Shown one piece after another: positions 15,533 through 58,968 of a DNA stretch of 64,000 bases (positions are counted from its first letter, which is position 1; every line of letters begins with the position of its first letter). The translations under genes were made by a program, and so were the position numbers. Below the pieces are notes generated by a model. The model did no database searches. It was not told the origin of the DNA and worked only from the letters and a program-made list of their open reading frames with translations. Source of the stretch: Macrostomum lignano (taxonomy: Eukaryota); NCBI GenBank assembly GCA_002269645.1, contig NIVC01001722.1:181922-245921 (forward strand). Reading direction: 5' to 3'.

Positions 15533-15584
<52 letters not shown>

Positions 15585-18757: not shown

Positions 18758-19117
18758 GCCGCTTCGGCTGCAGTGACCACCGGCTCAAGCGGAGGACGAT
18801 CGCAGGACTGCTTGCTGCCTGCCGCTTCGGCTGCAGTGACCGCCGGCTCAAGCGGAGGACGATCGCAGGACTGCTTGCTGCCTGCCGCTTCGGCTGCAGT
18901 GACCGCCGGCTCAAGCGGAGGACGATCGCAGGACTGCTTGCTGCCTGCCGCTTCGGCTGCAGTGACCGCCGGCTCAAGCGGAGGACGATCGCAGGACTGC
19001 TTGCTGCCTGCCGCTTCGGCTGCAGTGACCGCCGGCTCAAGCGGAGGACGATCGCAGGACTGTTTGCTGCCTGCCGCTTCGGCTGCAGTGACCACTGGCT
19101 CAAGCGGAGGACGATCG
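18758..19117. repeat. 63-bp tandem repeat (~6 copies) in the left arm only
   Basis: GCCGCTTCGGCTGCAGTGACCGCCGGCTCAAGCGGAGGACGATCGCAGGACTGCTTGCTGCCT repeated; the right arm has one partial unit. Confidence 0.9.
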
Positions 19118-27841: not shown

Positions 27842-27905
<64 letters not shown>

Positions 27906-29413
27906 GAAGAAGAAGAAGAAGAAAAGAAGAAGAAGAAGAATAATACTAATAAGAAAAACAAAATTATAATAAAAAACAATTGATTATACCTGCCTTAATG
28001 GACAGATGTGCAACCGACAGCTCGCTCGATCAGCCACCGCTATTTTCGCGGCGCATCTGAAGGCTTTCAGATGCTAATTCGGTAACTCGATCGTCGATGC
28101 TGGGTACTGTACTCGCGGACACCCCCGGGTTAGACTGCTCGGTGCTCGATGCTCGGAATGAAATGACTGAACCAATTACGATCGCCCAACCCGGGCTGTA
28201 CCTCAACAGTTTATTTTCTGCGTAATACTGCAGGCCTGCTGGAGACCCCACCAATTGATTTAGCCTTTCCCCGGATTGCGACATCTGCCTGTCGAGTGAC
28301 ATCAAGTTATTAGAAGACAATATCTTCGCCGTCAACAGTTATTTAGAACTCATAGATCTTATATATATTCTCTGATAGGCCACTCCCAATGCATTCAATT
28401 CAGTAGCAGCAGTTCTTCACACTATAGCTTCATTATTGCTGAAACTTTCTGATTTTTATCGTTTCTTGTATATTTCGTTTACATTTTCAACTGTTTTGTT
28501 TGAATAACGATTTTTCATTCGCTCATCCTCATGGTTCAAGTGAAAATACACATCATTTGCAAGAATTATACAAAAAAATGAAAATAGCTATAAATATGCC
28601 TTGATACGCGCATAAGCTACTGACCTGATACGTGGTCGCTAAATTTTCCAAGAAATACAAAGGCTCTATGGGCGCGCCATAGGCGTAAGAACGGGGGGGA
28701 CAGTAGGGCCATGGCCCCCCCACTTTTTAAAGTTGTAGGGCCAGTATGGTATCTGCATGTGGCCCCTCCACATTTTAAATGCAAATTATGTAGACTTTTT
28801 GCCTATTTTTTACTCTTCTTTCTGGTTTTGCTGCTTCGCATGAATGCATTTTGCTGCAGGACGACAAAACATGCGCCAAAATGAGTACCTGCAGCGCCAA
28901 AATGAGTGCCTGCGGCGCCAAAATGAGTGCTGACAACACCGATTCTGAAAGTAATCGGTACATGATAATGTGCATTTCCCATGTAAAAAATAAAAAAATC
29001 TTACTCGACGGGGGAGGGGCCGGGGGGCGTGCGCCTGTGGAAAGCCGATTTTGAGAGAGCTGGATTGGTGAGCCAGGTCGCGGATTAGCTTAATCTCCGG
29101 ATTAGCTGATGTCTGCTTTTGAAATTCTCGCCGTCTTTTCTTAGCTACCGCGGGACCTTCGGCTGCTCGCCATATCTATGCTACCCTTGAGGATCACCAT
29201 CTGACGGAACTGGGAGGCCAGAGCATTAGGTGATCGATTTCTATGCTCTCAGGTCCGACAAGTTTCCATTCAAGAGCTTAAGAAGGCCGAACCCATCAAT
29301 TTATTGGTGATGCTGAGGCTGGAGGTTAAAGAATTAAGCAGAAGAATGGGATGGAGAGTAGCATTCTTATGCTGATGCTGAAGGTTGACTAAAAATTACC
29401 ATGCAGTATTTAT

Positions 29414-32341: not shown

Positions 32342-33520
32342 TTAATGTTGGCGAAAGGCCACCAACGGAGGTGGCGGCAAGACTTCAAAGTAGCCCACTT
32401 GGCGAACGGAGCCAAGCCGACGCGTGAGGAAGCGACGCCGTTTTGCGGCGGGACTCGTGCTGCTTCTGCTGCTGTTGCTTCTGCTGCAGTCGCGCTGGCG
32501 CTGCTGAGCAATCACAGGCGCGCGCCGAGAAGCAGTAGAGCGAGTAGGCGTAGGGCAGGTCGTTGCGTTGAATAGTACCGGTGGCGGCGACCTTCTACTA
32601 GCGTGCTGCTGACTCTGCTGAAGGCGTGGACTGCGGCTGCGCGATCGGCTGGCGATGCGGCTGACCGCCCGGCCGACCAGACGCAAGGCCCGCTGACCAA
32701 ACGAGGCGCTGCGACTTCGGTTACTGCAGGCTTCCTGTTGTTGCTGTTGTTGGATCGGCTCAGTCCACGGCTCAACCCACGGCTCCAGTCGCTCGATCCA
32801 ATTAGTAGGATAAGAGCCGATTTCGTGAGCGAAATCTATTAGCAGGGTCGATATGCCATTGATGCGACCCAACAGCTCCATCGTAGCGTCCATAGGCTGA
32901 ATGAGGCTGGGGCCGAGACAGGCACCCAGATTCGGCGCTGGCATACGATTGATTTGGCTGTGCGAAGAAACACGCTTCAGAAACAGGCAGAGATAGCGCA
33001 TGGCTGTAAGTTGGCTACTCGGCAATAGCAGACAGCCGAGGCGAAGAATCTTGACTTGCTTCTCCAGGGTTCGCCTGTTTGTTGCCTGTAGCAAAATCTT
33101 GGACAATTCACGAGGTACAAGGGGCTCTGGAAGCTCTCTCAGCCAGGCTTTTAGCACCGAACAGACATCGTGAACTGGAGTAGCATCTAGTATAGGCAGT
33201 CCCTTGTCCAGCCGCAGTCTTAAATCTCTCTGACGCACCTTCGAGCCTTCAATTCGAAACAATCCTTCGACTTGTAGATGATCGCTGATAAAGGAACAGC
33301 AGGCAACGAGGACAGTCGGGACTTTACCTATTCCCTCAATCTCGGTGGATGCCTGCTGCAGCAGAGGTCGTCCAAAGCATTGTGTACTTCGTTCTGTGTA
33401 AGCTGGTAGTCTGGCCTTGGGTAGCTGGATGCCTAGCTGAAGCAATTCTTTAACGGCAAGAGCGCAGACCTGCCGCTGCTTTGCTTCGCTGAGTTTTTCG
33501 CAGTAAGTTGTGCCAGACAT
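32342..33520 (-). CDS. Intronless RhoGAP, ARHGAP11-like, 392 aa
   Basis: FGRPL...VPTVLVACCSFI...VEGLFRIEGS (arginine finger)...HDVCSVLKAWLRELPEPL...NRMPAPNLGACLGPSL; the N-terminal extension resembles ARHGAP11. Confidence 0.88.
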   Translation of the reverse strand: MSGTTYCEKLSEAKQRQVCALAVKELLQLGIQLPKARLPAYTERSTQCFGRPLLQQASTEIEGIGKVPTVLVACCSFISDHLQVEGLFRIEGSKVRQRDLRLRLDKGLPILDATPVHDVCSVLKAWLRELPEPLVPRELSKILLQATNRRTLEKQVKILRLGCLLLPSSQLTAMRYLCLFLKRVSSHSQINRMPAPNLGACLGPSLIQPMDATMELLGRINGISTLLIDFAHEIGSYPTNWIERLEPWVEPWTEPIQQQQQQEACSNRSRSASFGQRALRLVGRAVSRIASRSRSRSPRLQQSQQHASRRSPPPVLFNATTCPTPTRSTASRRAPVIAQQRQRDCSRSNSSRSSTSPAAKRRRFLTRRLGSVRQVGYFEVLPPPPLVAFRQH

Positions 33521-40994: not shown

Positions 40995-41078
40995 ATCAAG
41001 CAGAAAAGCGGTCAAAAAAAGAAAACGCCAACGGACTGCGAAATGCTATAGGCTGTTTTGTTCATAAAAGTACATCAA

Positions 41079-44000
41079 TCAGTTTTTCCTCATAGGCGGC
41101 TTCAGCGCCCAGTTCGGCGCCCCGTCAGGAGGCGGCCGCTGCGACCTGGAGCGCAGCGGATCCCGGATGCAGCGGCCCAGCTGCTGCTTCTGCTTGGTGG
41201 TGGCGCAGTTGTCCATGTAAACCTGGTCAAGCTGGCGTTTCAATCGTTTCACTTCGTCCGATTCCCAGGCGAGCTCGCGGACGCGCAGCTGGTCGGAGCC
41301 GCCGGAGCCGCACTCCTCGTCGGAGCTGGTGTAGTCCCGGGTGAGGATGACGCGGAACTTCTCCAGCTCGTCCGAGCTGAGGCTGGTGGCCACGAGTTCG
41401 AAGCTTTTCTGGCGTCGGTTCAGCTTCTGGAAGGTCGACGATGAGGATAAGAGGTTGGCGGAGAATGTGATTTGGGGACTCTGATGGGAGAATGGGATTT
41501 GGGGACTCTGATGGGAGAATGGGATTTGGGGATGCTGATGGGAGAATGGGATTTGGGATGCAGGTGGGAGCATGGGATTTGGGGTGCTGTTGGGACAATT
41601 TGATTTGAGGATTCAGGTGGGAGAATGGGATTTGGGGATGATTGTGGGAGAATGGGATTTGGGGATGCTTGTGGGAGAGTGGGATTTGAGGATTCTGGTG
41701 GGAGAATGGGATTTGGGGATGCTGATAAGAGAATGGGATTTGGGGATGCTGATGCGAGAATGGGATTTGGGGATGCTGATGGGAGAGTGGGATTTGAGGA
41801 TTCTAATGCGAGAATGGGATTTGGGGATGCTGATGGGAGAGTGGGATTTGAGGATTCTAATGCGAGAATGGGATTTTGGGATGCTTGTGGGAGAGTGGGA
41901 TTGAGGATTCTGGTGGGAGAATGGGATTTGGGGGATGCTGATAAGAGAATGGGATTTGGGGATGCTGATAAGAGAATGGGATTTGGGGATGCTTATGGGA
42001 GAGTGGGATTTGAGGATTCTAATGCGAGAATGGGATTTTGGGATGCTTGTGGGAAAGTGGGATTTGAGGATTCTGGTGGGAGAATGGGATTTGGGGATGC
42101 TTATGGGAGAGTGGGATTTGAGGATTCTAATGCGAGAATGGGATTTTGGGATGCTTGTGGGAAAGTGGGATTTGAGGATTCTGGTGGGAGAATGGGATTT
42201 GGGGATGCTGATAAGAGAATGGGATTTGGGGATGCTTATGGGAGAGTGGAATTTGAGGATTCTAATGCGAGAATGGGATTTTGGGATGCTTGTGGGAGAG
42301 TGGGATTTGAGGATTCTGGTGGGAGAATGGGATTTGGGGATGCTGATGGGAGAATGGGATTTGGGGATGCTTGTGGGAGAATGGGATTTGAGGATTCTGG
42401 TGGGAGAATGGGATTTGGGGATGCTGATGGGAGAATGAGTTTCTTCAAGGAATTTAGAATCTCGATTTGGACCGGATCATATTTATGGAGGAATGGAATG
42501 AGAAATGGTTTCGATACGGCAATTATCGGTACCTTACCATCCGGTTTTGAGTGGTAGTCACAAAGCTAATCAAATAATAATGTAAATTCTATACAATATG
42601 ACACTGCACTAAAGTAGAAGCGCCCCTAAAGAATCCCACGGGCCAAGTCTGCAGACTAGAAGTAGATTTTTAATCTGAACAGGCAGATAAGCAAGCAGTA
42701 TTGGACGATTGGCCAAATGGAATAACTCATTACTGTTAGGCGAAGCTTGCTGCGCATCTGCTTTCTAAAATCCCAGAAAATGTCAGTCAGCCGGCTAGTT
42801 TTAGGCAGTCCTGCGCGCAAAGATAACAGTTGCTTATTGTAAATCGGGGCGAATTGAATTTTTGATTTTAAACTTGCACTGCTGGAGCCAGAGAGGACGA
42901 TAAGTAGAATAGAATGCTTTTATTCCGACAAAATTTTGCTGGAGGTTAATAGACTAAGCAAGTGAGCAGTCTGATTACATTATGGCGCAGTTTGATCCGA
43001 ATCTGCTTCCCAAAGTCCCAGAAAATCTCCGACAGTCGGCCAGCCTTTGGCAGCCCTGCGAAGTTTAAACAATTCATCATAATAATTTGCATTATTAGCT
43101 ATGGTCTGCGTTGCTTAATTCGGGCAAGGGTGAAGAGTAAACAAGAGAGTGAACAGAAAAGTGAAGAGAGTGAATAGGAGAGTGAACAGAAAGGTGAATA
43201 GAATGAACAAGAGAGTGAACAGAAAGGTGAAGAGAGTGAACAAGAGAGTGAACAGAAAGGTGAAGAGAGTGAAGAGAGTGAACAGAAAGGTGAAGAGAGT
43301 GAACAGAGTGAACAGAAAGGTGAATAGAGTGAACAAGAGAGTGAACAGAAAGGTGAAGAGAGTGAAGAGAGTGAACAGAAAGGTGAAGAGAGTGAACAGA
43401 GTGAACAGAAGGTGAATAGAGTGAACAAGAGAGTGAACAGAAAGAAGAGAGTGAACAGAAAGGTGAATAGAATTAACAAGAGAGTGAACAGAAAGAAGAG
43501 AGTGAACATAAGGGTGAATAGAATGAACAAGAGAGTGAACAGAAAGAAAGAAGAGAGTGAACAGAAAGGTGAAGAGAGTGAATAAGAGAGTGAACAGAAA
43601 GGTGAATAGAGTGAACAAGAGTGAACAGAAAGAAGAGAGTGAACAAGAGAGTGAACAGAAAGGTGAAGAGAGTGAACAGAAAGGTGAATAGAGTGAACAA
43701 GAGTGAACAGAAAGAAGAGAGTGAACAAGAGAGTGAACAGAAAGGTGAAGAGAGTGAACAGAAAGGTGAATAGAGTGAACAAGAGTGAACAGAAAGAAGA
43801 GAGTGAACAAGAGAGTGAACAGAAAGGTGAAGAGAGTGAATAAGAGAGTGAACAGAAAGGTGAAGAGTGAACAGAAAAGTGAAGAGAGTGAACAAGAGAG
43901 TGAACAGAAAGGTGAAGAGTGAACAAGAGAGTGAACAGAAAGGTGAAGAGAGTGAACAGAAAAGTGAAGAGAGTGAACAAGAGAGTGAAGAGAGTGGTGA

Positions 44001-47000
44001 AGAGAGTGAAGATGAAGAAGTCCTCATTTTGGCTTTAAGCAGTTACAAAAAATTGCAAATACAAGCACAATGCAGCCCTTCTTGCCAATCCTAGTTGGAA
44101 ACAGGGATAAAATATACGACTAGAATTGGTCCCACGGTTGGCACACAGGAGAAGGAAAAGCATTGAAATCAAAATTACACTTAGGCGAAATTTAGTCCGA
44201 ATCTGCTTCCCAAAGTCTCTGAAAATCTCGCACATTCGACCGGCTTTTGGTAGCCCTGCGAAAAAAACGCATTTAGATGGAAGAGATACAGGCTTTGTTT
44301 CAATCGTTTTTTTTGCGCTTGCATTATTGATTCGAGAAGAGCGGTGGATGGTGTAAAAGATAATAAAGATGCGAAAATGTTACGAAATCGATCTATTGAT
44401 TTAGAGTAGGCTATGCTCAAATAAGTTAGGACAGTTGGATCCTATTCTAGGTCTATTCTCAAAGTAATAAAGGGTCTATTCTCAAAGTAATAAAGGGTCT
44501 ATTCTCAGTGGTAATCAAGGTCTACTCTCTTGATGATGAAGGGTCTATTCTCAGGTGTAATAAAGGTCTACTCTCTGGGTGATGAAGGGTCTATGCTCAA
44601 GGTGACGGAGGTCTATTCCCAAGGTGATAAAGGGTCTAGGCTCAAGGTGACGGAGGTCTATTCCCAAGGTGATGAGGGTCTAGGCTCAAGGTGACGGAGG
44701 TCTATTCCCAAGGTGATGAGGGTCTATTCTCAGGAATAATGAAGGATGGATTCTGGATGGTGATAGGGTGATTTTGCATAGACTAGATTCCAGAATTAAC
44801 TAAAAACTGGCAGATTTGAGCGCAAGGAAATCAGAAAATGCAGAAAATGCGATGTAAGTAATATAAATATTAAACTCGTTTCTTTGGCTTCAGCAAGTGT
44901 TTTTGGTATTTTTGTGCAAAATTTTTTATTGGAATGGAGTTGATAAATGCCAAAATTTGAAACGCAGGCATTGGTAGATTAAAACTATGCTTTCCGAAGA
45001 ATAATATATCCCTTACTAAGCCGCGATATTTGTCGTGCACTTGTCGCTTAAAGTCGCTAAAAATGACGGACAGTCTGCCAGACTTGGGCAGGTCTACAAT
45101 ATAGCGCAGAGTTTTTATGGGCACAAATGCAAGCAAGCTACTGAAAGTAGTACAATTTAGCGGCACTATTGCCTGCTGATTTGGAATGGAAACGTCTGAA
45201 ACAAACAGCTACAGTAGAGCTGGGGCTATCCTATTAACTATAGCGAGAACATAACTCACAAGCTGCTTAAACTTGCATCTGGCCTTCAGAGCAAAATCGG
45301 AAAACATGTACAGAATACGACCGCGACAAGGAATCCCTGAAACACAGACGGAGTCAATAATCTCTGAAAACAGTGCAGAGTATATACTGCTCTTGACCAG
45401 CTGTGCTAGAACGACACCATGCTCGTTGGAAACGGCGCTTTTCTTTGGTTCAAAGAATTATTTCCTGGATTACTAAGCACTAAATAACTTACAGACAGTC
45501 TCATTTTCAAACGACTTGCGGAGCGAAAATTTTGAAATATATACAGCAGCCTACACGAGGTGGGGATTCCTTCGGATGGAGGGCGGCGACCGCGATTATT
45601 TTTTTATATCGAGATTTATATGTGCAGAGATAAGAAAGTCGCAAGTGCTTTGTGACCCGGCAGTAGTAGACTATTACTAGCAGTAGGTAGTCTCGGGTTT
45701 AACTTAAAAAGACAGACTCACGCTAATCCGATATTTGGCCCGAATTTTGGTGCCAAAATTGGAGTGCAAATAGTTAATCCGACTGTCCTTAGGGAGGTCT
45801 GCAATCGATGCCAGTAAAATCAATAAAATCAATCACGCTTCGGTAGGAGTAAAGAGCGAGGGCCAAGGAAGGAAAACATCGCAAGCTGCTGAGGCGCTAA
45901 GAAATTTGAAAGATGCCTACTTAAACTTAGTAGTATATATGAAATTGCACGTATTTATCAATCTTACAAAGCTTCTAAACCGGAAGCGCATTTTCCGGCG
46001 CAAATCGATAAATAGGAAGATAGTGCGCGATGCGTAGGGCAGCTCTGAAATCTAGTGTTTTATGGTGCTGCTTTGGGGCCGGAATCTGCCGCTAAGGTAG
46101 ACAGGCCTAATTGCCTACTGAAAACGTCGCTAGAGATCAATTTACGGAGTTCAGACAGACGAAGCACTGAACAGGTGATTTTCGTTTATAAGTTTATTAA
46201 CTTCGATCTAAACTACAGATACTAGAATAACTAGATGGACCACTCAGCACATTTGCGTGTAAGCTACTTGCAGTTCAGTATAAAGTTATACAGAAGCATT
46301 TTAATGTATTTTTCAAGACAAGGCTCATTTATTTTCTATGAAACACTAAAACCTACCCCAAGCTGCCAAGTACATTTCAGTGGGGTGTTGGCCAATGTAC
46401 AATACGACTGAACCAATTAGCAAGTTGTTTACGTCTGCAAGCTTTGTTTGTTTGTTTGGCTTCTAAACTTATCAAAGTCATTTGAGCTTATGTTTTCTTC
46501 TTTGCTACTGAACTGGAAGTAGAAAGCTGTTTTACTAAATAAATATTCACAAGTGGCCCCATCTAGTTATTTTAGTATTTTGTGCACTAAACAGAGTAAT
46601 GATCTTGATTAGACCTCAATACAGAGTTCCATTGCATCGAGATTCACCCCTAGAATCCTAAGCATCCCTTGACAGGAACGGATCCCGAGACTTCTACCCT
46701 CACAACCAAGCTAATAGCTTGCTAAAACAAAGAAAAACAAGAGAGCCACAACACCAAAAAACCATGACAGCTGCTCATCCTGTCTTACTGTCTCTCTGTA
46801 CTTGGCCCTAAGCGCGCTGCGTATGTGACAAAACACCCTGTCAGGCCGGGATTTGTACGGCAAATCTGTAAGCATTAAATATTTTGTTAAATAATAATTC
46901 CTAGCCTCTAATCAGCATTTAGCCGGAACCAAATTAGACGAAATGGATTAGAAACGTCACAAGAGCACCTATTGATTAAATTGAACAGAAGAGACCGGAT

Positions 47001-50000
47001 TGACTAAATCAAACCAACTTGGGTCTCACATTAAGTTTCAAAGCGTGCCTAGACTCGAAGCGCATTTTAGAGAATGCTGTTGAGATTCGAAATTCGCTTC
47101 GCAGTCCTGAAATTGAACAGGTCTGAACTATGCCGCTCTGCCTTGTTTCAAATTCACTTTTTCTCATTGCTCTGCACTTGTTGGAAGGAGAAACCGCCAT
47201 TTGCCGGCTAATCCCAACTTACTAGCGCTTTGAAACGCTTTTTAGCGTCGGTTCTAAACGAAATGAAAATCATTGAGATCCGCGCCTCTTTCGGCAGCCC
47301 TGCAAACGCGCGCAATTGTTAAGGCGGGGCATTGAGCTTAAACAAATAGGGGAGATCTGAACTCGGCTTTCACAGGCCTGGAAACGGCTTTGCTTCATTT
47401 CTGTTATCATTTAAACAGAAAATATTTAATACTACTGTAAAAATGCGACATCTACTACTTACGCAAAGTTTAAGTCGCGTTCTGGCGTTTAGTTTAAACG
47501 ACTTGAATATAAAGTTAATTCGGCCATCTTTAGGCAGCCCTGGAAATCGGCCAATCGGTTGTTGCCTCTTGTATATTAACTAAGAAGAGATATTTGCATC
47601 TGGAAACGCTGCATGCAGCTCAGTGGACTCAAGCTCAAGGCGAATAATAGGGAAGCCAGAACTGTTAAAGTTTGCTCCTTCAGTTAAGCAAGAGTATATA
47701 TCCCTATCCGTTGTCCCATCAACACTTACACACAGTTTAAGCCGGGCTCTGGCATTCCGTCTAAAGGACAGAAATATAAAATTTATTCGGCCCTCTTTTG
47801 GCAGACCTAAAAAAACAGATTGCATACGAATAAATTGGATTCTCTTGGCCCAGCAGCTGACATTTTTGTCAGTGTCAATTGACTTGACCGGAGAATCTGG
47901 AAACGCTGCAGCTAAAGTTTAAGCATTCGAATCCATAGCAGCCGGAGTCAGACTGGAGGCGACACGCAATGACACATAACTTGATAAATACTATTAGTCG
48001 CAGCACTTACAGAAGTTTTCAATCTAAGCCGCATATCGCGACGGAATTCAGCGAACATGGCGACAGTACGCCTTAGCAGTTCTACAATTTTTTTTCAATA
48101 ATTTAAATATAATAACAGTGCACAAATATCCTTTTAATACTACTATCCAGCGGCCTAGTTAGTAGCAGATGCACATAGTGTACTATAAAATGTCAGATCT
48201 ATAAAAAAACTGGGTATAAACAGCTGACAAGGGCAGAATAGCGGGACGTTACCAATTGGTGAAGAAAGACAGCAGTCAGAACCCCATTTTTATTGAAAAT
48301 AATAGTTAATTAGGTAATTAATTCATACGCGACTTACAATTGATGGCAGCAATTTTATTGCCATTACTCAACAATTTATTGCTGAATATAATATATAAAA
48401 ACAAATTATAATATTATTTAAAATTGAGTGCATTGCTTCGAAAGGTGAAAGATAGTGTTTTAAAATTATAAATGAAATTATTGCCTCTGAATTATATGTC
48501 ATATTTAGTAAATTTTAACATAGATAATTTAATTTGCTCAAGCCAAAGAACTTGCGACGTTTCCAGACCAAGTAGGCAAGGAGAAAAAGTGACACATTTG
48601 GAATTACACAAGCTGCTTATATAATAATTATTAACAGTGCTTGTACTTGCTATCAGTAGTAGTATGCAGAGAATATTGTTTCAAATGCACAAATTCGCAA
48701 GCAAGATATTCAACTAGTTAGTAGGCTTAAGGGAGGCGACCAACAAAGAGTTAAATTTATTGATTTTTTGGTGCACCAATATCTCAGCTTTGCATCCCTG
48801 TCAACTTAATAAGCACCAATTCTTGTTAAATGCATCATATACACAATATTATCATTCCGTGTTAGACAGAACCTTCGTATTTATCCAGCTATAAAGATAA
48901 TTGATTTTCAATATCAAGCCGCCAATCTCAAGCCTACACTAATATGCTCAATACTACGGTAGCTAACAGCTGCACATTAAGTGCCAAAAAATGCCAAACT
49001 CACTCTGCCAGACGTCGTCCGGCCAGCCTTTGCCTTCGGCCATCTCTTTAGCCTTAGCCATGACCATGGCGGCAACTTGTTGGTTGGGCTCCGCGGAGAA
49101 GCTAAGCGAGAGGACAAGTGGGAATCGAGAGGAGCAGGAATTAGCCAATTTAATGCAGCCATACATTATTAATAAAGAATGGGGACGGCAACTCACTGAA
49201 GGATTTGGGGATGGGGACGGCAACCCACTGAAGGATTTGGGGATGGGGACGGCAACCCACTGAAGGATTTGGGGACGGGGAGGGCAACCCACTGAAGGAT
49301 TTGGGGATGGGGAGGGCAACCCACTGAAGGATTTGGGGATGGGGAGGGCAACCCACTGAAGGATTTGGGGATGGGGAGGGCAACCCACTGAAGGATTTGG
49401 GGACGGGGAGGGCAACCCACTGAAGGATTTGGGGATGGGGAGGGCAACCCACTGAAGGATTTGGGGATGGGGAGGGCAACCCACTGAAGGATTTGGGGAT
49501 GGGGAGGGCAACCCACTGAAGGATTTTGGGGATGGGGACGGCAACCCACTGAAGGATTTTGGGGATGGGGACGGCAACCCACTGAAGGACTCCGCATTCA
49601 AGCTTTACTTACGGCATGCTAAAATCGAATAGGTGAGGTCCGTTTCCTTTAAGCATTTTGTAGGCTCGTCGCATGATAGTCTTGCACTCGGGGGGCACGT
49701 CGCCGCCGCTTCCGCCGCCGCCGCCGCCGCTGCTGCCGAAGCCGCTGACGCCGGCTCCGGAATAATCGGCGGACAAGTCGAGTCGAGGAATTTTGGCATA
49801 GGGGAATCCGGCGCTAAGACTGTCGTCGTTCAGCTCCTCCGTGATGATGCAATCGTCTTCCTCCTCTTCGTCGGCTTCGTAATCGTCGCCTTCCACCTGT
49901 GATTCGACATACATAACGGCTGCGTTTTAGACACAACATTAATGTGCTCGGGCGATCAAATGACCTTGAGTAATAGCAGAGTCAAATGACCTTGAGTGAT

Positions 50001-50944
50001 AGCAGAGTCAAATGACCTTGAGTGATAGCAGAGTCAAATGACCTCGAGTGATAGCAGAGTCAAATGACCTCGAGTGATAGCAGAGTCAAATGACCTTCAG
50101 TGATAGCAGAGTCAAATGACCTTCAGTGATAGCAGAGTCAAATGACCTCGAGTGATAGCAGAGTCAAATGACCTTCAGTGATAGCAGAGTCAAATGACCT
50201 TGAGTGATAGCAGAGTCAAATGACCTCGAGTGATAGCAGAGTCAAATGACCTCGAGTGATAGCAGAGTCAAATGACCTTGAGTGATAGCAGAGTCAAATG
50301 ACCTTGAGTGATAGCAGAGTCAAATGACCTTGAGTGATAGCAGAGTCAAATGACCTTGAGTGATAGCAGAGTCAAATGACCTTCGGTGATAGCAGAGTCA
50401 AATGACCTTCAGTGATAGCAGAGTCAAATGACCTTCGGTGATAGCAGATTAAAATGACCTTCAGTGACGGTGGCAACACAGTTTTAAAACGACTAACCTT
50501 AATGGCGCCAAGCGCCGCGCCCAGCACGCTACTGGCGCCCATGTCGCCAAGTACAGACGCTTTCTCTTCCTTAGTTGAAGCATTGGCGCCGCCAGACAAA
50601 GACGAGGCGGCAGTTGATTCGCGATGCAGCTGCTGATGCTGCGATGGCGGCGGCTGTTGCTGCTGGTGCTGCTGCTCTCCGGACACGCTGGCGACAAGGC
50701 CGGCGGCTTCTAGCTCGGCGAGCCGGTCGCTTCGATCGAATGCCCGACAATACCTGGGCTCCATGGAGTGAACCACGTGAGTGTGCAGATTGCCGATGAT
50801 TTTCAGTGCAGAGAACAGTTCGCGCTCGGCCATGGACTCTACGAGCATTTGCGCGTTAGTGATGGTGGATTCGAACAGGGTGAGAGGCGAGAAACTGTTG
50901 CCAGGCGGCAGCAGGCTCGAGTGCGGGCTGAGTACGTCTGCCAT
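41079..50944 (-). CDS. C14orf93/RTFC-like nuclear protein, paralogue B, with a variable cassette exon
   Basis: Exons 50498-50944, 49613-49896 (CKTIMRRAYKMLKGNGPHLFDFSMP), 49004-49101 (PFSAEPNQQVAAMV...DDVWQ), one cassette from 42734-48081, and 41079-41426 (KLNRRQKSF...RDYTSSDEE...LRVRELAWES...RQLD...RPPP). All junctions are GT-AG and in frame (417 aa by the direct path). The motifs parallel recalled human C14orf93 segments (KLRSRR, EELMSDEED, HLD, SDRLP). Confidence 0.7.
41455..42437. repeat. ~28-30-bp G-rich intronic minisatellite (GGGATTTGGGGATGCTGATGGGAGAAT variants)
   Basis: In the last intron of paralogue B; generates several spurious long ORFs. Confidence 0.9.
43130..44025. repeat. Purine-rich compound minisatellite (GAGTGAACAGAAAGGTGAAGA/GAGTGAACAAGA)
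   Basis: Inserted between cassette exons 44179-44255 and 42979-43055. Confidence 0.9.
44440..44735. repeat. Degenerate tandem repeat (GGGTCTATTCTCAAGGTGAT variants)
   Basis: Intronic, between cassettes 45017-45093 and 44179-44255. Confidence 0.75.
48551..48569 (-). promoter_or_regulatory. Putative RNA docking site for mutually exclusive splicing (pre-mRNA GGUCUGGAAACGUCGCAAG)
   Basis: Lies between the upstream constitutive exon (ends 49004) and the first cassette. It is complementary to motifs at 47896, 47599, 47377, 46949, 46118, 45872, 45633, 45427 and 45187, each 60-94 nt upstream of a cassette acceptor. Confidence 0.75.
49197..49590. repeat. 32-bp intronic minisatellite (CCACTGAAGGATTTGGGGATGGGGAGGGCAAC)n
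   Basis: About 12 copies in the paralogue B intron 49102-49612. Confidence 0.95.
49960..50460. repeat. 26-bp intronic minisatellite (GTCAAATGACCTTGAGTGATAGCAGA)n
   Basis: About 19 copies in paralogue B intron 1. Confidence 0.95.
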
Positions 50945-51004
50945 TCCGGAGCGGCGGGCATGAACGGAACAGTAATGGATGACTTAATTAGTGACGAGTT
51001 CAAG

Positions 51005-51730
51005 TGAACCTGTAAATCCCATAATTCAACCTTTAACTCCCTAAATCAAACCTGTAAATCCCTAAATTGAACCTGTAAATCCCATAATTCAACCTGCAAC
51101 TCCCTAAATCAAACCTGTAAATCTCTAAATCGAAGCTATAAATCCCATAATTCAACCTGCAACTCCCTAAATCAAACCTGTAAATCTCTAAATCGAAGCT
51201 ATAAATCCCATAATTCAACCTGCAACTCCCTAAATCGAACCTGTAAATCCCTAAATCGAACCTGTAAATCCCTAAATCGAACCTGTAAATCCCTAAATTG
51301 AACCTGTAAATCCCTAAATTGAACCTAAAACTCCCTAAATTGAACCCGTAAATCCCTAAATTGAACTTGTAAATCCCTAAATTGAACTTGTAAATCCCTA
51401 AATTGAACCTGTAAATCCCTAAATTGAACTTGTGAATCCCTAAATTGAACTTGTGAATCCCTAAATTGAACCTGTTAATCCCATAATTCAACCTGCAACT
51501 CCCTAAATCGAACCTGTAAATCCCTAAATCGAACCTGTAAATCCCTAAATTGAATTTGTAAATCCCTAAATTGAACCTAAAACTCCCTAAATTGAACCTA
51601 AAACTCCCTAAATTGAACCTGTTAATCCCTAAATTGAAATCCCATAATTCAACCTGCAACTACCATAATCCAGGCTGTAAATACCATAACTGAACCTGTA
51701 AGTCATAATTGAACCTGTAACTACCTGGTA
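51005..51730. repeat. 21-bp minisatellite (AACCTGTAAATCCCTAAATTG)n
   Basis: Directly upstream of the paralogue B ATG. Confidence 0.9.
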
Positions 51731-52691: not shown

Positions 52692-55600
52692 TTAAATGTT
52701 AGTTTTGAAATCCTCCGCCAGCGCCCAGTCCGGACAGTCTGTAGGTGGCGGCCGGCCGCTAACGCTGCTCGAATCTCTGATTGTCCGGCGCAGCTGTTGC
52801 GACTGCTTCTGATTGGCGCAGGTTTCTAAGAATGCCTCGTCCAATTGGCGCTTCATGCCGGCCATCTCGGCGGACTCCCAGGCTAGCGAGCGGACTCGGA
52901 GAGCTCCGCTGCCGCCGGCTCCTCCACCGCCGCCGCCGCCTCCGAGTTCGTCGCTGGACAAATCGGCCGCGGTGGCATCCTCATCGGAGGAGGTGTAATC
53001 TCTGGACAGCAGGACGCGGTACTTGTCAAACTGATCGGTTGACAGGCTGCTAGCTAACAGTTCGAAGCTCTTCTGCCGGCGGGCTAGTTTCTATGGGGAA
53101 ACAGGCGAGGGCCAGAGGGGACGGGGGTCAAGTGGGATTTTAGTACATTTCATTCTGGTGCATCAAGCTATACAATATATATTACTATTAAACTTTTTTA
53201 TAGCATCATACTTACCTGCCCAAGCTGCCCTAAGGTAAAAGTATTATAAATTCAGTATTATTAACATATACTCGTACAAACTTTCTGTAAGCAGGAGAAA
53301 CAGAATATGAAGGCAGCACTAGAATGAGAGAAGATACTTTGCCAGGTAAGAAATGTCCCCAGTGCATGAAACTGTCTCACGTTCATGAGACATTGGTACT
53401 ATTATTTATGCGCTTATAAGGGCGGTTCTAAATGTGTGTATGGGGCGATTTCTAATGTGCTTATAGGGAGATTCTTAATGCACTTATAGGACGATTCTTA
53501 ATGCACTTATAGGGCGATTCTTAATGCACTTATAGGGGCGATTCTTAATGCACTTATAGGGAGATTCTTGATGCACTTATAGGGCGATTCTTAATGCACT
53601 TATAGGGAGATTCTTAACGCACTTATAGGGCGATTCTTAATGCACTTATAGGACGATTCTTAATGCACTTATAGGGAGATTCTTGATGCACTTATAGGGC
53701 GATTCTTAATGCACTTATAGGGGCGATTCTTAATGCGCTTATGGGACGATTTTCACGGGCTTATAGGACGATTCTGAACGGGCTTATAGGACGATTCATA
53801 ATGCGCTTATAGGACGATTCTCAACGGGCTTATAGGGTGATTCTTAATGCGCTTATAGGACGATTCTCAACGGGCTTATAGGACGATTCATAATGCGCTT
53901 ATAGGGCGATTCTTAATGCGCTTATAGGACGATTCTCAATGGGCTTATAGGGCGATTCTTAATGAGCTTCTAGGGCACATCTTAGGGCGGTGTTCGCGCG
54001 GAGTTAGAGCAGAACCAACCCAACGGCCAAGACCTAACAACCTACTCTTTGGCGATTTCTTTGTCTGCGCTTTTCGGCCGCGAATTTCTCTCGCATTTTC
54101 AGCGCACTAGAGCTGAGATCCTGGGCAAACAGGTACAGTTCGTCTGAAAACAGCGGTTTAAAAACAACAAGAAGTCAAAGATTGAGTTTAACTGAAAATT
54201 CTAAAAAAGCTTTAAGCCAGTGCCAGAAACACGTTTGAATGGCGCTAATCTGGGCGAGCATTTCGGTGACAAAACATGGAAATTTAAAACACCACAAAAA
54301 CAATCTGTCAGTCTATCAATTAATCAATGAAATCATTATAAATAAACATTCTCGGACCTTTCTTCGACTGCGCAGTTTGCTCATAGCGAGCTTGTTGCTG
54401 CTGCGCCTGTTCTGCACAGCCCGCTGCATGTTGCAATAAACGTCAAGAAATAAGCCTAAAATAGTCATAAATTAGTATGCAAGTTGTTTTATTTATGCCC
54501 AAACTACTGACAAGTAGTGCACTTGGGGATCGCAATATTTATCGAATGGTGTCGTGTCGCATTCATAGCTGAGGCCAGTGTGAAAAAAGCGGAAATAAAA
54601 ACAATGGCATTAAAATTAATACTTGCTGACACCATTGAAACTCGCGGTACTATTAATATACCTTCTGTTTGTAGCGAATCCTCCTTATCCGCATTTTATT
54701 CTTATGCAGATCGTCTTTAACTAGGCCGTACTGCTCCCGGGCGGCGGCTAAAAAGATCGCATTTATTAGCAAAAACCTTTAGCGAGTACTACTATAAGTA
54801 GTTAATCAGCATGTAAGAGCACTTGCGATCTTGTGACCTTGAACCAGCGACATAGTGATAATGATGGAGAATACAATGAATAAAACTTTAATTATTTTCC
54901 AACAAAGAAACGTGTGGTGTTAACAACTAGAATCAATTAATTAATGATTAACTGTTAAATAACGGAGTTAATTAGATGATTAATTGCATAAAAAGGCTAG
55001 CAAAAGTGCCGGATCTAACATTAACGACCCATGGCATTTGCTAACATATTTAACATTAACGGCACCATTTTGTGATAATGTAGACATAGATAATGGAAAC
55101 TCCTATAAAATGGCTTGACGGTCACCAAATGCAAGGAATAGGCCCATCGTGTACAACGGCAGCTTATCTGGCAGCTTGACATTTTCATAACTATTTAGTA
55201 AGCGAGAATTATATGATTTTATAAAGAAGAATTTGCTAACTTACTCCACCACACGTCCTGCGGTATGCCAGGCAGTGGCAGCTGTCTCTGCGCGTGAGAC
55301 ATCACCTGTTCTGCTACGCGCTGATTCACCGAGTCTGTAAAACTAAAATGGGCAGAAGGGTGGCCGGAACTAATAAGGTGTATGCAGATAGGCAATTAGC
55401 TTTGTATGGCACTTGGTAGCTAGGCACATAGGCAGTAAAAAAACTTTCTTATTGGGCTTGACCTAAGAGGCCTGGACCTTAAGGTTATTGCTAATGAGGT
55501 TAGAGGGTTATTGCTAATGAGATTAGAGGGTTATTGCTATTGAGGTTAGAGGGTTATTGCTAATGAGATTAGAGGGTTATTGCTAATGAGATTAGAGGGT

Positions 55601-57311
55601 TATTGCTAATGAGGTTAGAGGGTTATTGCTAATGAGATTAGAGGGTTATTGCTAATGAGATTAGAGGGTTATTGCTATTGAGGTTAGAGGGTTATTGCTA
55701 ATGAGATTAGAGGGTTATTGCTAATGAGGTTAGAGGGTTATTGCTAATGAGATTAGAGGGTTATTGCTATTGAGGTTAGAGGGTTATTGCTAATGAGATT
55801 AGAGGGTTATTGCTAATGAGATTAGAGGGTTATTGCTAATGAGGTTAGAGGGTTATTGCTAATGAGATTAGAGGGTTATTGCTAATGAGATTAGAGGGTT
55901 ATTGCTATTGAGGTTAGAGGGTTATTGCTAATGAGATTAGAGGGTTATTGCTAATGAGGTTAGAGGGTTATTGCTAATGAGATTAGAGGGTTATTGCTAT
56001 TGAGGTTAGAGGGTTATTGCTAATGAGATTAGAGGGTTATTGCTAATGAGGTTAGAGGGTTATTGCTAATGAGATTAGAGGGTTATTGCTAATGAGGTTA
56101 GAGGGTTATTGCTATTGAGTTTAGAGGGTTATTGCTATTGAGTTTAGAGGGTTATTGCTAATGAGGTTAGAGGGTTATTGCTAATGAGATTAGAGGGTTA
56201 TTGCTAATGAGGTTAGAGGGTTATTGCTAATGAGATTAGAGGGTTATTGCTAATGAGGTTAGAGGGTTATTGCTAATGAGATTAGAGGGTTATTGCTAAT
56301 GAGGTTAGAGGGCCATTGTTAATGATCTTAGAGGGCCATTGTTAATGAGCTTAGAGGGCCATTGTTAATGAGCTTAGAGGGCCATTGTTAATGATCTTAG
56401 AGGGCCATTGTTAATGAGCTTAGAGGGTCATTGTTAATGAGCTTAGAGGGCCATTGTTAATGAGCTTAGAGGGCAGTGCGACACAAATAACTTAAAACGG
56501 GCGTTTCGTAATGAGTTTAAACAATAAGATTAGTGTGCGATTATCGAACTCACGGCATAGAAAAGTTGAACAGATGCGGCCCGTTTCCTTTTAACTCTCT
56601 ATACGAGTTGCGCAGCGCCGATCTGCACTCGCTGTTGACGCCGGTCACAGGCAAAGCTGCTGCCCCAGCTACTGACAGCTCCTGGCTGGTGCCAGCCGCT
56701 GCAGTTTCTTGACGAGTTCGCTTCCTACTAGGAGACGCTGCAACAGCGGCCGAGGCGGCGGCAACGCCGGGCGGCGGAGCAAAAGCGGCAGCTGAGCCAG
56801 CAAGAGAACCGTCCTCCTCCATGATCAGGCAATCGTCAATAGAGTCCTCATCCTCAATCAATAGCTGCTCCTCTTTGACGCTGCCGCTGCCAAATAGTGA
56901 GATGCTGCGGCCGCCAGCTGATTGGGCGGCGTCGAACTCAGTTTTTGGCCGAGTCGAGGCGCCATTGGCTGTGGCCTGGCTGACAGTGCCAGCGGCGGCT
57001 ACTGACGATGGCAGCGGAGATGACGCAGCCGAAGATGTTGTGGCGGCGGCGGCGGCGCCAGACAGGAGGCAGGCTCCGTGAGCTTCGCTCCGAGCAAATG
57101 CTCGCTCGCATCTGGGCTCAATAACGCCAACAATGTGCGTGTGAAGGCCGCTGGCAATGCGGAGAGCGTGCAGCAGCTCTCTATCAGCCATGGATTCAAT
57201 CAGCATCTGAGCGTTAGTAATTGTGCACTCGAATAGTGTTAATGGAGAAAAATTGTTTGAATTGTTTGGGGCACCAGCGTTGCCGCTCAATTGCGCTACT
57301 TCGCAAGCCAT
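52692..57311 (-). CDS. C14orf93/RTFC-like nuclear protein, paralogue A, with at least 3 alternative exons
   Basis: Exons 56554-57311 (FSPLTLFECTITNAQMLIESM...GPHLFNFSMP), 55245-55342 (98 nt, same length and phase as the B exon), one of 54662-54747 / 54358-54455 / 54046-54143, and 52692-53090 (KLARRQKSF...RDYTSSDED...LRVRSLAWES...RQLD). It is clearly paralogous to gene B. Confidence 0.72.
53440..53985. repeat. ~22-bp intronic minisatellite (GGGCGATTCTTAATGCACTTATA)n
   Basis: In the last intron of paralogue A. Confidence 0.9.
55480..56472. repeat. 23-bp intronic minisatellite (GAGGGTTATTGCTAATGAGATTA)n
   Basis: About 43 copies in paralogue A intron 1. Confidence 0.95.
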
Positions 57312-58968
57312 TGCTGAGTTTGTTGCAGAAGCCTGGTAGAGAGCAGCTGTCAAGTGTTATGATTGGCTTTAGCGGGTTTCTATAGACAGAGGAGCTGGAA
57401 TTGGCAGCAATGGTTAACCAAAAACTCAATCAGTTATGTCATTGTCATATACATGCATACATGCACAACCCCCAAAATTCGGTCGGCCGTGTGACTTAGT
57501 TTTAACAAAATGCGACGTAGTTTTTGGCCAAAAATGCGACTTTGGGTAAACTGCGTTAAACTCTGCTTGGCCAAATTGCCGTCTTGTGCTTTTGTGGGGG
57601 CTGGTCACTAATTGCAGATTGTAATGCTCTTGGAAATAGCAATTTTACTAATCTATAAGTATTCTATGTAATGTATAAATACACTATATTGTATGCAATG
57701 TTATATTACTAAAAAACTCAACTAATTACAAAACTTGGAAATTGAGTATCCTAGAAAATGGTTGAGTTACTCAACAAAAAATTGTCAAGTCAGATACTCA
57801 ACAGGCACAATAATAAAGTACTATAGTTAATAAGCTAAATATCTGCTAGATAATATTAACTTTAAAGAAACTAACATTAACAATAACCTATAATGTTATA
57901 AATATATAGCAGAATTCAAAACTTAATATAGATAATAATATATAAACCTTTACCTTAGCACCATAGTTTAGGTGACATATATGCCAAGATTTCTTGGCAT
58001 ACAACAAGGTCTTAGGTCTTATATTTTAGCATACATAAGGGTATATCCCAGCATATATGACAGTAGATACATGCCAAATAATAAATTTTTGTATTGGTGC
58101 ACAAACCTAGTATACAAACAAGGTTTCATCAATTTTTCTAGCATTAAACCTGGCATTTACTAATATATGATTTGAACTATGGCCTCAGTAGCCACACTCT
58201 GGATCATATAGTATATGCCCAAAAATTTGGACATGCATTAGCCTTGCATGCCAAAAGTAGGCATGCACAATTGGCATATATCATTCTTACAAAAATCATG
58301 TATGCACACCTAGCATATACTTTATAAAATCAACACAGAATAGTTATTGTGAAATGGAAAAAAAGATGAAAAAAGTTCATTTTAAGTATAATTTTCAAGC
58401 TTTACAGGTTTTTAAGCTTGTAATAAAGCATTGATTTTCCACTATGAATAATATTGCTGAAAATATTGCTGAAATTGCTGAAAAAGCAGAAAAATAAAAT
58501 AAATTATTTGCCATAAAGGTTCCATGGTATTATGCAATTCAAAAATGGAGTACTTATAGGCATGGCGGCCATGTCTATAATATTTGAGCTTATAGGCATA
58601 GCTATTATCATCAATATAAAATGCATGTTCTATAGGGCTCTCTTATAAGCAAATGGTGGCTTAGTAGATATGTCAATTGCCTTGTGATTGGGTGTAGGAA
58701 GGTTTAAATCCCAAGAGGTTGGTGTTTTTTAATTTAAAATTTTTTTAGCAAATAGATTTTTTTCCATCTATAACTTTTTAAGTTTTTTATTAAAATAAAA
58801 AATAAATTAAATTAAATTTTTTTAATAAGAATTCTTTGCTAAATCCTAGTGCAGCCACAAATATATATGTAGCCCATAGTCAGGAAGGTGGTCTTTGCCA
58901 TTAAAAATTCCAGCACAATACAAGGGGTCCTTGGCACACAATCATGGTGCACACTAAGGTCCCTGGCA

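What the first reader, a model, noticed from the sequence alone, without database searches (positions are those of the whole stretch)
45187..48569. Docking-site/selector base-pairing code controlling the cassette array
Seen in sequence: a single intronic site at 48551-48569 reads GGUCUGGAAACGUCGCAAG in the pre-mRNA. Plus-strand motifs matching it (so complementary to it in the pre-mRNA) sit 60-94 nt upstream of nine cassette acceptors: TCTGGAAACG (47896, 47599), GGCCTGGAAACG (47375), TAGAAACGTCACAAG (46949), CTGAAAACGTCGC (46118), GAAAACATCGCAAG (45872), AGAAA-GTCGCAAGT (45633), TGGAAACGGCGC (45427) and TGGAAACGTC (45187). Several of the longest matches differ from the consensus by G-to-A changes on the plus strand, which become G.U wobbles in RNA. 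That pattern is expected from selection on RNA pairing rather than on a DNA motif. All selectors overlap the same docking core, so only one can pair at a time. Established: this is the architecture of the Dscam1 exon 6 docking/selector system. Inference: the same mechanism arose independently here.
Basis: partly seen in the sequence, partly recalled or inferred. Interest (0 to 1): 0.93.

Follow-up and report, generated by a model that had tools for sequence, protein, structure and literature searches.

The report
Flatworm exon-choice RNA pairing code
A flatworm (Macrostomum lignano) gene carries 14 interchangeable small exons, and one deeply conserved intron sequence is complementary to short sequences in front of nine of them, which is the RNA base-pairing design insects use in Dscam1 to pick one exon per transcript and which here appears to have evolved independently.

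Summary
All nine motifs and the docking site sit exactly where stated. The gene is on the minus strand of a Macrostomum lignano contig. Each motif lies 59-93 nt upstream of the acceptor of a 77-nt cassette exon.

Predicted docking-selector duplexes are -21.8 to -28.5 kcal/mol. Each is matched by 0-17 of 1000 target shuffles. Their mean is 8.5 sd beyond shuffled docking sites. The docking site is the best-pairing window in its intron and the only such site in the 7.4-kb variable region.

Two paralogous genes, about 40% identical over the N-terminal half of the protein, carry the same 17-nt docking core in the equivalent intron. It is the only 12-mer or longer shared by the three introns. They also carry selectors in front of their own cassettes. 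Family loci without cassette clusters lack the site.

- The array has 14 cassettes, not nine, and five have no convincing selector.
- The G.U wobble bias is only marginal (33 to 14, p about 0.05).
- The docking core is invariant, so no compensatory covariation is available.

No transcript or mutational evidence was accessible. I judge this a new, independently evolved member of the Dscam1 exon 6 type docking/selector mechanism. I found no published case in a flatworm.

The parts
49004..49101 (-). Upstream constitutive exon U (98 nt, ...FSAEPNQQVAAMVMAKAKEMAEGKGWPDDVWQ). Its GTGAGT donor at 49003 opens the intron that holds the docking site.
   Evidence: Spliced model translates to a full ORF matching P0013 and P0002.
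48550..48569 (-). Docking site. The core conserved across paralogs is CUGGAAACGUCGCAAGU (48566-48550). It lies 434 nt downstream of the U donor.
   Evidence: It is predicted to be largely unpaired locally.
48011..48081 (-). Cassette E0 (71 nt, KLLRRTVAMFAEFRRDMRLRLKTS), the first variable exon. No selector detected.
   Evidence: -17.0 kcal/mol, reached by 106 of 1000 shuffles.
47894..47910 (-). Selector 1, upstream of cassette E1 (47806-47730).
   Evidence: -26.2 kcal/mol, 1 of 1000 shuffles.
47598..47614 (-). Selector 2, upstream of cassette E2 (47539-47463).
   Evidence: -28.5 kcal/mol, 1 of 1000.
47375..47386 (-). Selector 3, upstream of cassette E3 (47299-47223). Forms 12 bp with the 5' half of the docking site, including one U.G pair.
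   Evidence: -24.5 kcal/mol, 6 of 1000.
47030..47106 (-). It has only a weak partial complement (UUCAGACC, 47110-47119).
   Evidence: -20.9 kcal/mol, 104 of 1000 shuffles. The peptide is present in UniProt model P0010.
46949..46963 (-). Selector 4, upstream of cassette E4 (46865-46789). Forms 15 bp with two G.U pairs.
   Evidence: -27.0 kcal/mol, 0 of 1000. The same 13-mer CTTGTGACGTTTC lies before the orthologous cassette d3 of paralog L003.
46118..46133 (-). Selector 5, upstream of cassette E5 (46044-45968).
   Evidence: -25.9 kcal/mol, 2 of 1000. Shares GCGACGTTTTCA with the L003 d4 selector.
45872..45887 (-). Selector 6, upstream of cassette E6 (45798-45722). Forms 16 bp with three G.U pairs.
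   Evidence: -26.6 kcal/mol, 1 of 1000. Shares GCTTGCGATGTT with the L002 c2 selector, at 76 versus 78 nt from the acceptor.
45631..45652 (-). Selector 7, upstream of cassette E7 (45569-45493). It pairs mainly with the 3' half of the docking site (GUCGCAAGU plus the window-specific flank CUUUG).
   Evidence: -21.8 kcal/mol, 13 of 1000.
45427..45447 (-). Selector 8, upstream of cassette E8 (45336-45260).
   Evidence: -24.1 kcal/mol, 17 of 1000. E8 is the single cassette in NCBI model P0013 of the duplicate locus.
45187..45196 (-). Selector 9, upstream of cassette E9 (45093-45017).
   Evidence: -22.7 kcal/mol, 12 of 1000.
42734..44255 (-). Three further cassettes: E10 44255-44179, E11 43055-42979 and E12 42810-42734. 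Each is 77 nt with a weaker GTAAT donor. They are separated by satellite arrays and have no convincing selector.
41079..41426 (-). Downstream constitutive exon D (KLNRRQKSFELVATSL... to the stop codon).
   Evidence: With exactly one cassette the ORF is intact (417 aa). With 0, 2 or 3 cassettes the frame shifts.

Best explanation
This is a docking-site/selector system of competing RNA base pairings. It most likely chooses among tandem, mutually exclusive 77-nt exons in a Macrostomum lignano gene of an uncharacterised metazoan protein family.

Shown from sequence:
- In the pre-mRNA (minus strand), one docking sequence lies 434 nt downstream of the donor of constitutive exon U.
- Nine of the 14 cassettes carry a 10-22 nt complement of part of that sequence, 59-93 nt upstream of their acceptor.
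- In the predicted duplexes every selector uses the same GGAAA core.
- Each cassette is 77 nt (E0 is 71 nt), so 0, 2 or 3 cassettes shift the reading frame.

Inferred:
- Because the selectors share that core, one transcript can form only one docking-selector helix at a time.
- The helix loops out all cassettes upstream of the chosen one. This brings the chosen acceptor close to the U donor and favours U-to-cassette splicing.
- As in Dscam1 exon 6, an additional, unidentified repression of the non-selected downstream cassettes is needed so that the chosen cassette is joined to exon D.
- The frame shift from wrong cassette numbers acts as a fail-safe.
- The five cassettes without selectors (E0, E3b, E10-E12) may be default, rarely used or differently controlled exons.
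- The system arose before three paralogous genes diverged, and independently of the arthropod examples.
For: - Exact motifs and canonical exons.
- Duplex energies far beyond shuffles, for each of the nine selectors and jointly.
- The docking site is the best-pairing window of its intron and unique in the 7.4-kb variable region.
- The selector core is the top enriched k-mer of the inter-cassette introns in an unbiased count.
- Replication in paralog genes L002 and L003. They have the same 17-nt docking core in the same intron, selectors before 7 of 7 and 4 of 5 cassettes, and docking-shuffle z of -4.9 and -7.6.
- The docking core is the only 12-mer or longer shared by the three first introns, while four-fold sites between the paralogs are 48-67% identical.
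- Orthologous cassettes in different paralogs share only their selector block upstream.
- Different selectors match different parts of the docking site. E3 matches the 5' half and E7 the 3' half, with almost no common motif. That fits a helix better than a shared protein-binding motif.
- There is a wobble bias on the transcribed strand, 33 to 14.
- Six of six cluster loci have the docking site. Family loci without clusters have none.
- Annotated gene models each contain one cassette, and different ones: E8 in P0013, E6 in P0002 and d3 in P0006/P0017.
- Frame analysis.
Against: - No transcript-level evidence of mutual exclusivity or of use of each cassette was available. The gene models are annotations, not junction counts.
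- No compensatory covariation is possible because the docking core is invariant.
- The wobble test is marginal, and its events are partly shared by descent.
- Own docking site versus foreign docking site energies favour co-adaptation (15 of 20, p 0.007). This test is confounded because the window's docking flanks are generically G/U-rich.
- The duplicate locus L004 is only about 1% diverged. Finding zero changes in the docking site and selectors, against about 3 expected, is therefore weak evidence.
- Five of 14 cassettes lack selectors, and the mechanism that skips downstream cassettes is unknown.
- The helices of E3 and E7 overlap only slightly on the docking site, so strict one-at-a-time pairing is not guaranteed for every pair.
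Confidence: 0.8

Rival explanations
1. The repeated element is a binding site for a protein, either an RNA-binding splicing regulator or a DNA-binding factor, placed before each cassette. The single inverted copy upstream is a further site or a coincidence, and no RNA-RNA pairing is involved.
For: - The core CGUUUCC is shared by many selectors.
- For a double-stranded DNA site, orientation is irrelevant. One inverted copy out of ten would then be unremarkable, because the selectors' common orientation follows from tandem duplication.
- There is no covariation to prove pairing.
Against: - Selectors tile different parts of a 20-nt-plus sequence, and some pairs (E3 versus E7) share almost nothing with each other while both complement the docking site.
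- Matches are contiguous blocks, as helices require. Internal non-Watson-Crick positions are mostly G.U (8 wobble, 2 A.C, 4 transversions).
- The element conserved most strictly is the single inverted copy (17 of 17 nt in three paralogs). That is expected if it must pair with all the others.
- An RNA-binding protein would not recognise both a motif and its reverse complement.
Confidence: 0.1
2. The complementarity is a neutral relic. An ancestral intronic hairpin was copied along with the exon by tandem duplication (the Ivanov and Pervouchine scenario), and the copies have no present function.
For: Tandem duplication of an exon together with one arm of a stem is a published route to exactly this pattern (PMC6071210). 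The window and its duplicate L004 are too similar to show constraint.
Against: - The rest of every intron has diverged beyond alignment between paralogs. The docking core and the selector blocks nevertheless remain identical, at similar distances from their acceptors.
- Four-fold sites between the paralogs are only 48-67% identical.
- The k-mer counts show no other conserved intron element between cassettes.
Confidence: 0.03
3. Pairing is real, but its role is to activate or bias use of the E1-E9 block as a whole, or to set relative frequencies. Exclusivity itself would come from other means, such as frame-shift surveillance, repressors or splice-site competition.
For: - Five cassettes lack selectors yet keep intact frames and splice sites.
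- The 77-nt length makes wrong cassette numbers out of frame.
- The helices of E3 and E7 barely overlap on the docking site.
- In Dscam1, further hidden structures and a locus control region modulate choice (PMC8791459 and PMC3535345, listed).
Against: In the MFE duplexes all nine selectors use the same GGAAA core, which is the arrangement expected for competition.
Confidence: 0.07

Closest known systems
Drosophila/arthropod Dscam1 exon 6 docking site-selector system (Graveley 2005; described in PMC6071210 and PMC11802352)
   Same: - One docking site in the intron directly downstream of the upstream constitutive exon.
- A selector upstream of the variable exons, each complementary to an overlapping part of the docking site.
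- The docking site is the most conserved intronic element.
- A tandem array of similar-length homologous exons.
   Different: - The gene and protein are unrelated: there are no Ig or FN3 domains, and the protein belongs to an uncharacterised family.
- The organism is a flatworm, not an arthropod.
- There are 14 cassettes of 77 nt rather than 48 of about 124 nt.
- Only 9 of 14 cassettes have a clear selector.
- The same docking sequence is kept in three paralogous genes.
- The repressor (hrp36 in flies), the locus control region and balancer structures are unknown here.
- Nothing has been tested experimentally.
Competing RNA structures in insect 14-3-3 zeta, Mhc and MRP exon clusters (Yang et al. 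2011; Yue et al. 2017; cited in PMC6071210)
   Same: Selectors compete for one docking site to give mutually exclusive choice in small tandem exon clusters. These systems arose independently in several genes.
   Different: According to PMC6071210, in those genes the docking site lies downstream of the cluster. Here it lies upstream, as in Dscam1 exon 6. Those cases are arthropod genes.
Bidirectional or multi-stem control (Drosophila srp, bee Dscam exon 4, silkworm exon 9; PMC4691838) and mammalian two-exon cases (ATE1, PMC7797038; DNM1)
   Same: Long-range intronic RNA pairing decides between mutually exclusive exons.
   Different: Those cases use exon-flanking stem pairs or two-exon competition. 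I searched for a second set of complementary elements or a downstream docking site here and found none.
Evolutionary model of Ivanov and Pervouchine 2018 (PMC6071210)
   Same: Tandem duplication of an exon together with one arm of an intronic stem produces several selectors for one docking site. The orthologous selector variants shared between paralogs fit a single origin followed by duplication.
   Different: It is a model, not a system. Family members without a cluster, including the window's neighbouring paralog, show no docking-like stem that could be the precursor.

Membership tests
Docking-site/selector competing-RNA-structure system (Dscam1 exon 6 type) | Tandem array of homologous, similar-length alternative exons between two constitutive exons | tested here: met
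   There are 14 cassettes (13 of 77 nt, one of 71 nt) with AG/GT boundaries and one conserved peptide family, between exon U (49101-49004) and exon D (41426-41079).
Docking-site/selector competing-RNA-structure system (Dscam1 exon 6 type) | A single docking site in the intron between the upstream constitutive exon and the first variable exon | tested here: met
   The site is at 48569-48550. It is the best-pairing window of the 922-nt intron and unique over 49003-41574.
Docking-site/selector competing-RNA-structure system (Dscam1 exon 6 type) | A selector complementary to the docking site upstream of every variable exon | tested here: inconclusive
   Nine of 14 cassettes have strong selectors (0-17 of 1000 shuffles as good). 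E0, E3b, E10, E11 and E12 are at background level. In the paralogs the figures are 7 of 7 (two marginal) and 4 of 5.
Docking-site/selector competing-RNA-structure system (Dscam1 exon 6 type) | Selectors overlap on the docking site so that pairings are mutually exclusive | tested here: met
   In the MFE duplexes all nine selectors pair with GGAAA at 48564-48560. Caveat: the strongest contiguous helices of E3 and E7 overlap only slightly.
Docking-site/selector competing-RNA-structure system (Dscam1 exon 6 type) | Evolutionary conservation of the docking site and selectors within otherwise diverged introns | tested here: met
   The 17-nt core is identical in three paralog lineages and is the only shared 12-mer or longer. 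Selector blocks are shared between orthologous cassettes. Four-fold sites are 48-67% identical. Orthologues in other species were not available.
Docking-site/selector competing-RNA-structure system (Dscam1 exon 6 type) | Covariation or wobble pattern showing selection on RNA pairing | tested here: inconclusive
   The docking core is invariant, so no compensatory changes can occur. Wobble-compatible versus incompatible transitions are 33 to 14 (p 0.046), and internal positions are 8 to 2. Own docking site versus foreign docking site gives p 0.007 but is confounded.
Docking-site/selector competing-RNA-structure system (Dscam1 exon 6 type) | Exactly one cassette per mature mRNA | not testable with these tools
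   Only annotated models are available. P0013 has E8 alone, P0002 has E6 alone and P0006/P0017 have d3 alone. Some automatic models (P0003, P0010) join two cassettes. Frame analysis shows that wrong cassette numbers shift the frame.
Docking-site/selector competing-RNA-structure system (Dscam1 exon 6 type) | Exon choice depends on pairing (disruptive and compensatory mutations) | not testable with these tools
   This needs minigenes or transgenic worms.
Dscam / immunoglobulin-superfamily genes (homology to the classical host gene) | Ig and fibronectin type III domains; orthology to Dscam1 | tested here: not met
   No Pfam domain was found in any family member. Relatives are uncharacterised proteins of Patiria, Branchiostoma, Potamilus and Lingula. 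The resemblance is in mechanism, not descent.

The most novel reading that the evidence does not exclude
This would be the first multi-exon, upstream-docking (Dscam1 exon 6 type) selector code outside arthropods. It would have arisen independently in an uncharacterised metazoan gene family that expanded in Macrostomum, and it would be old enough to predate three paralogous genes that all keep the identical 17-nt docking core. The array is mixed: nine cassettes have selectors and five do not. That would imply two tiers of exon choice, pairing-activated versus default, within one cluster.
Probability: 0.55. Interest if true: 0.75.

Novelty: new member of a known kind. Interest (0 to 1): 0.62.

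Why it matters
Docking/selector codes are the best-understood way to enforce one-of-many exon choice. The well-documented multi-exon cases are arthropod genes, above all Dscam1.

An independent origin in a flatworm would show that the solution is a recurrent outcome of tandem exon duplication, not an arthropod peculiarity. It would also give three natural replicates, because the paralogs share one docking sequence.

The system would be small and tractable. The variable region is 14 exons and about 7 kb, and transgenesis is, to my knowledge, established in this animal. It could be used to ask two open questions. How are the downstream cassettes kept out? What distinguishes cassettes that have selectors from those that do not?

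It also flags an uncharacterised, widely distributed metazoan protein family whose basic helical segment is deliberately diversified in this species.

Tried and rejected
1. Second docking site or downstream docking site. Exact 8-mer complement counts over 49003-41574 against the upstream and downstream flanks of all cassettes, and a 25-nt RNAduplex scan against the five selector-less cassettes, found nothing beyond generic G/U-rich windows.
2. Further conserved elements between cassettes. The k-mer counts show only the selector core.
3. Constraint from the duplicate locus L004. Divergence is only about 1% (41 substitutions and 15 indels). None hit the docking site or selectors, but about 3 were expected, so the comparison is uninformative.
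4. Flank co-adaptation between docking sites and selectors across paralogs. The direction is favourable, but the test is confounded by the composition of the window's docking flanks.
5. Strong wobble evidence. The result is marginal.
6. Protein function. There were no Pfam or PDB sequence matches. The AlphaFold model of paralog P0006 has low confidence (pLDDT 57.5, pTM 0.35) and shows only that the cassette forms the start of a long helix, so I did not run a fold search on it.
7. Known RNA families. There are no Rfam hits in 41000-51000.
8. Further family loci, in the hope of a diverged docking site with co-varying selectors. L007-L009 have neither a cluster nor a docking site.
9. Literature. 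I found nothing on mutually exclusive splicing or docking/selectors in Macrostomum or other flatworms beyond Mhc and coq-2 exon pairs. Yue et al. 2017 (PMC5711460) is not held, so I could not fully check how widely published cases are spread across phyla.
10. A role for the AT-rich conserved element as a second docking site or a locus-control-region analogue. I rejected this because its windows show no pairing signal and it also occurs in paralogs without a cluster.

Full report
**What is there**

The window is part of Macrostomum lignano contig NIVC01001722.1. Locus L001, fetched through protein P0001, is the same sequence.

The finding lies in a gene on the minus strand. Its exons are 50944-50498, 49896-49613 and 49101-49004 (exon U), then one variable cassette, then 41426-41079 (exon D). 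Spliced with one cassette, this gives an intact 417-residue ORF identical to the annotated models apart from the cassette used.

In RNA sense each motif lies 59-93 nt upstream of an AG acceptor. That acceptor opens a 77-nt exon with a GTAAGT or GTGAGT donor, encoding a 26-residue basic peptide of one family.

- E0, 48081-48011 (71 nt)
- E3b, 47106-47030
- E10, 44255-44179
- E11, 43055-42979
- E12, 42810-42734

The array therefore has 14 members.

**Is the complementarity more than chance?**

RNAduplex of the docking region (48575-48545) against the 150 nt upstream of each acceptor gives -21.8 to -28.5 kcal/mol for E1-E9. Each value is reached by only 0-17 of 1000 dinucleotide-preserving shuffles of the target. 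The nine-target mean is -25.3, against -16.3 +/- 1.06 for 1000 shuffled docking sites (z -8.5).

Several unbiased scans point to the same site:
- Sliding a 25-nt query through the 922-nt first intron puts the docking site first. Its mean is -25.0 against a background of -11.2 +/- 3.2. The next best windows are generic G/U-rich sequence.
- Over the whole 7.4-kb variable region, the docking 8-mers are the only sequence whose reverse complement recurs in many cassette flanks.
- The selector core is the most recurrent k-mer of the inter-cassette introns.
- A 15-nt docking pattern with up to 3 mismatches hits 9 times in the window against 1.09 expected.

E0, E3b, E10, E11 and E12 show only background-level pairing. 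A dedicated search found no alternative partner for them.

**Evidence from related loci**

The protein family has many members in M. lignano. Two paralogs, on NIVC01000586.1 (L002) and NIVC01001693.1 (L003), are about 40% identical to the window protein over its N-terminal half. Each has its own array of 77-nt cassettes, seven in L002 and five in L003.

In both, the intron after the exon homologous to U contains the docking sequence: AGTCTGGAAACGTCGCAAG in L002 and GTCCTGGAAACGTCGCAAG in L003. The 17-nt core CTGGAAACGTCGCAAGT is the only 12-mer or longer common to the three first introns. Four-fold degenerate sites of the flanking exons are only 48-67% identical.

Selectors lie 42-107 nt upstream of 7 of 7 cassettes in L002 (two are marginal by energy) and 4 of 5 in L003. 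In each paralog the docking site is again the best-pairing window of its intron, with docking-shuffle z of -4.9 and -7.6.

Cassettes that are orthologous between paralogs share nothing in their upstream 150 nt except their selector block. The shared blocks keep the same variant bases and lie at comparable distances from the acceptor:
- E6 and c2: GCTTGCGATGTT
- E5 and d4: GCGACGTTTTCA
- E4 and d3: CTTGTGACGTTTC

Each of the three lineages also has a duplicate copy (L004-L006), about 1% diverged where measured (window versus L004), that keeps the docking site. L004 keeps all 14 window cassettes, and L005 and L006 keep every cassette of their partner locus that the scan recovered.

Family loci without cassette arrays have no docking-like site. 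These are the window's own neighbouring paralog at 57353-52692 and loci L007-L009.

**RNA pairing or a repeated motif?**

The docking core never varies, so no compensatory covariation can be observed. Three observations favour pairing:
- Selectors tile different parts of the docking site. E3 pairs with GGUCUGGAAACG and E7 mainly with GUCGCAAGU. The two share almost no motif with each other, yet both complement the docking site.
- Matches are contiguous blocks. With the register chosen by Watson-Crick matches only, transitions that keep a G.U pair on the transcribed strand outnumber those that give A.C by 33 to 14 (p 0.046). At internal positions the count is 8 to 2. This is suggestive only, and some events are shared by descent.
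- The single inverted copy is the most strictly conserved element, as expected if it must pair with all the others.

A test of own versus foreign docking flanks favours co-adaptation (15 of 20, Wilcoxon p 0.007). It is confounded by the composition of the window's docking flanks.

Locally the docking core is predicted to be mostly unpaired, and the region has no unusual stability (z -1.4). No Rfam family matches the region.

**Most likely mechanism**

The layout is that of Dscam1 exon 6 as described in PMC6071210 and PMC11802352. There is a docking site just downstream of the upstream constitutive exon and selectors upstream of the variable exons, all competing for overlapping docking nucleotides.

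I infer three steps. One helix forms per transcript. It loops out the cassettes upstream of the chosen one. It brings the chosen acceptor near the U donor.

Skipping of the downstream cassettes needs a further mechanism that cannot be seen in the sequence. In flies this is a repressor. I found no second set of complementary elements.

Cassette length provides a fail-safe, because 0, 2 or 3 cassettes shift the frame. The annotated models contain single and different cassettes: E8, E6 and d3. That is consistent with mutually exclusive use but does not measure it.

**The gene**

No Pfam domain or PDB relative was found. A full HMMER search finds 484 relatives. Most of the best hits whose source I looked up are M. 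lignano proteins. More distant hits include uncharacterised proteins of a sea star, an amphioxus, a mussel and a brachiopod.

In paralogs without an array, the cassette position is occupied by one longer basic segment just before the conserved KLxRRQ motif. A low-confidence AlphaFold model places the cassette at the start of a long helix. The host gene is thus unrelated to Dscam, and the mechanism must have arisen independently.

**Novelty**

Full-text searches found no report of docking/selector control, or of this cluster, in Macrostomum or any other flatworm. One relevant paper on convergent evolution of such structures (Yue et al. 2017) is not held.

I classify the finding as a new member of a known kind of system. 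It is notable for its phylum, for the upstream-docking layout with many exons, and for its preservation across three paralogous genes. Confidence in the pairing mechanism is about 0.8. The decisive tests are junction counts from RNA-seq, orthologous loci from other Macrostomum species, and disruptive and compensatory mutations.

Noticed in passing
window 48306-48322 and 54968-54984 (minus-strand RNA sense); L002 12016; L003 12506 and 5265: A second conserved intronic element, TATG(A/C).ATTAAT[TC]A[TC]CTAATTAAC. It is self-complementary and contains TAATTA cores. It lies about 230 nt downstream of the docking site. It also occurs in paralogs that have no cassette array, so it is family-wide and not part of the selector code. 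Its function is unknown.
   Followed up: partly
All are in frame and have splice sites, but none has a convincing selector. E10-E12 have weaker GTAAT donors and are separated by satellite arrays.
   Followed up: yes
window 52692-57353 (minus strand): A tandem paralog of the same protein family lies immediately upstream (its counterpart at the duplicate locus L004 is protein P0021). It has a single longer basic segment instead of a cassette array, and no docking-like site.
   Followed up: partly
L002 11087 and L006 11130: A second docking-like 14-mer, AGTCTGGAAACGCC, lies one intron upstream of the true docking site in this paralog pair only. It is absent from the window gene and from L003.
   Followed up: no
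window about 15100-19200 and about 24200-28300: A large inverted duplication with arms 94-100% complementary. One example is 16268-17059 against 26368-27159, which is 100% complementary over 792 nt. The arms carry proline/serine-rich repeat ORFs.
   Followed up: partly
window 41460-42437, 43134-44010, 44450-44732, 49179-49589, 49956-50467, 51005-51726: Long tandem satellite arrays with periods of 21-45 nt sit inside the introns of the cassette gene and between genes. The paralog loci carry different satellites at comparable intron positions.
   Followed up: partly
window 32342-33520 (minus strand): A 392-residue intronless ORF. An ORF of the same length is annotated with a RhoGAP domain at the corresponding position of the duplicate locus L004.
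   Followed up: no
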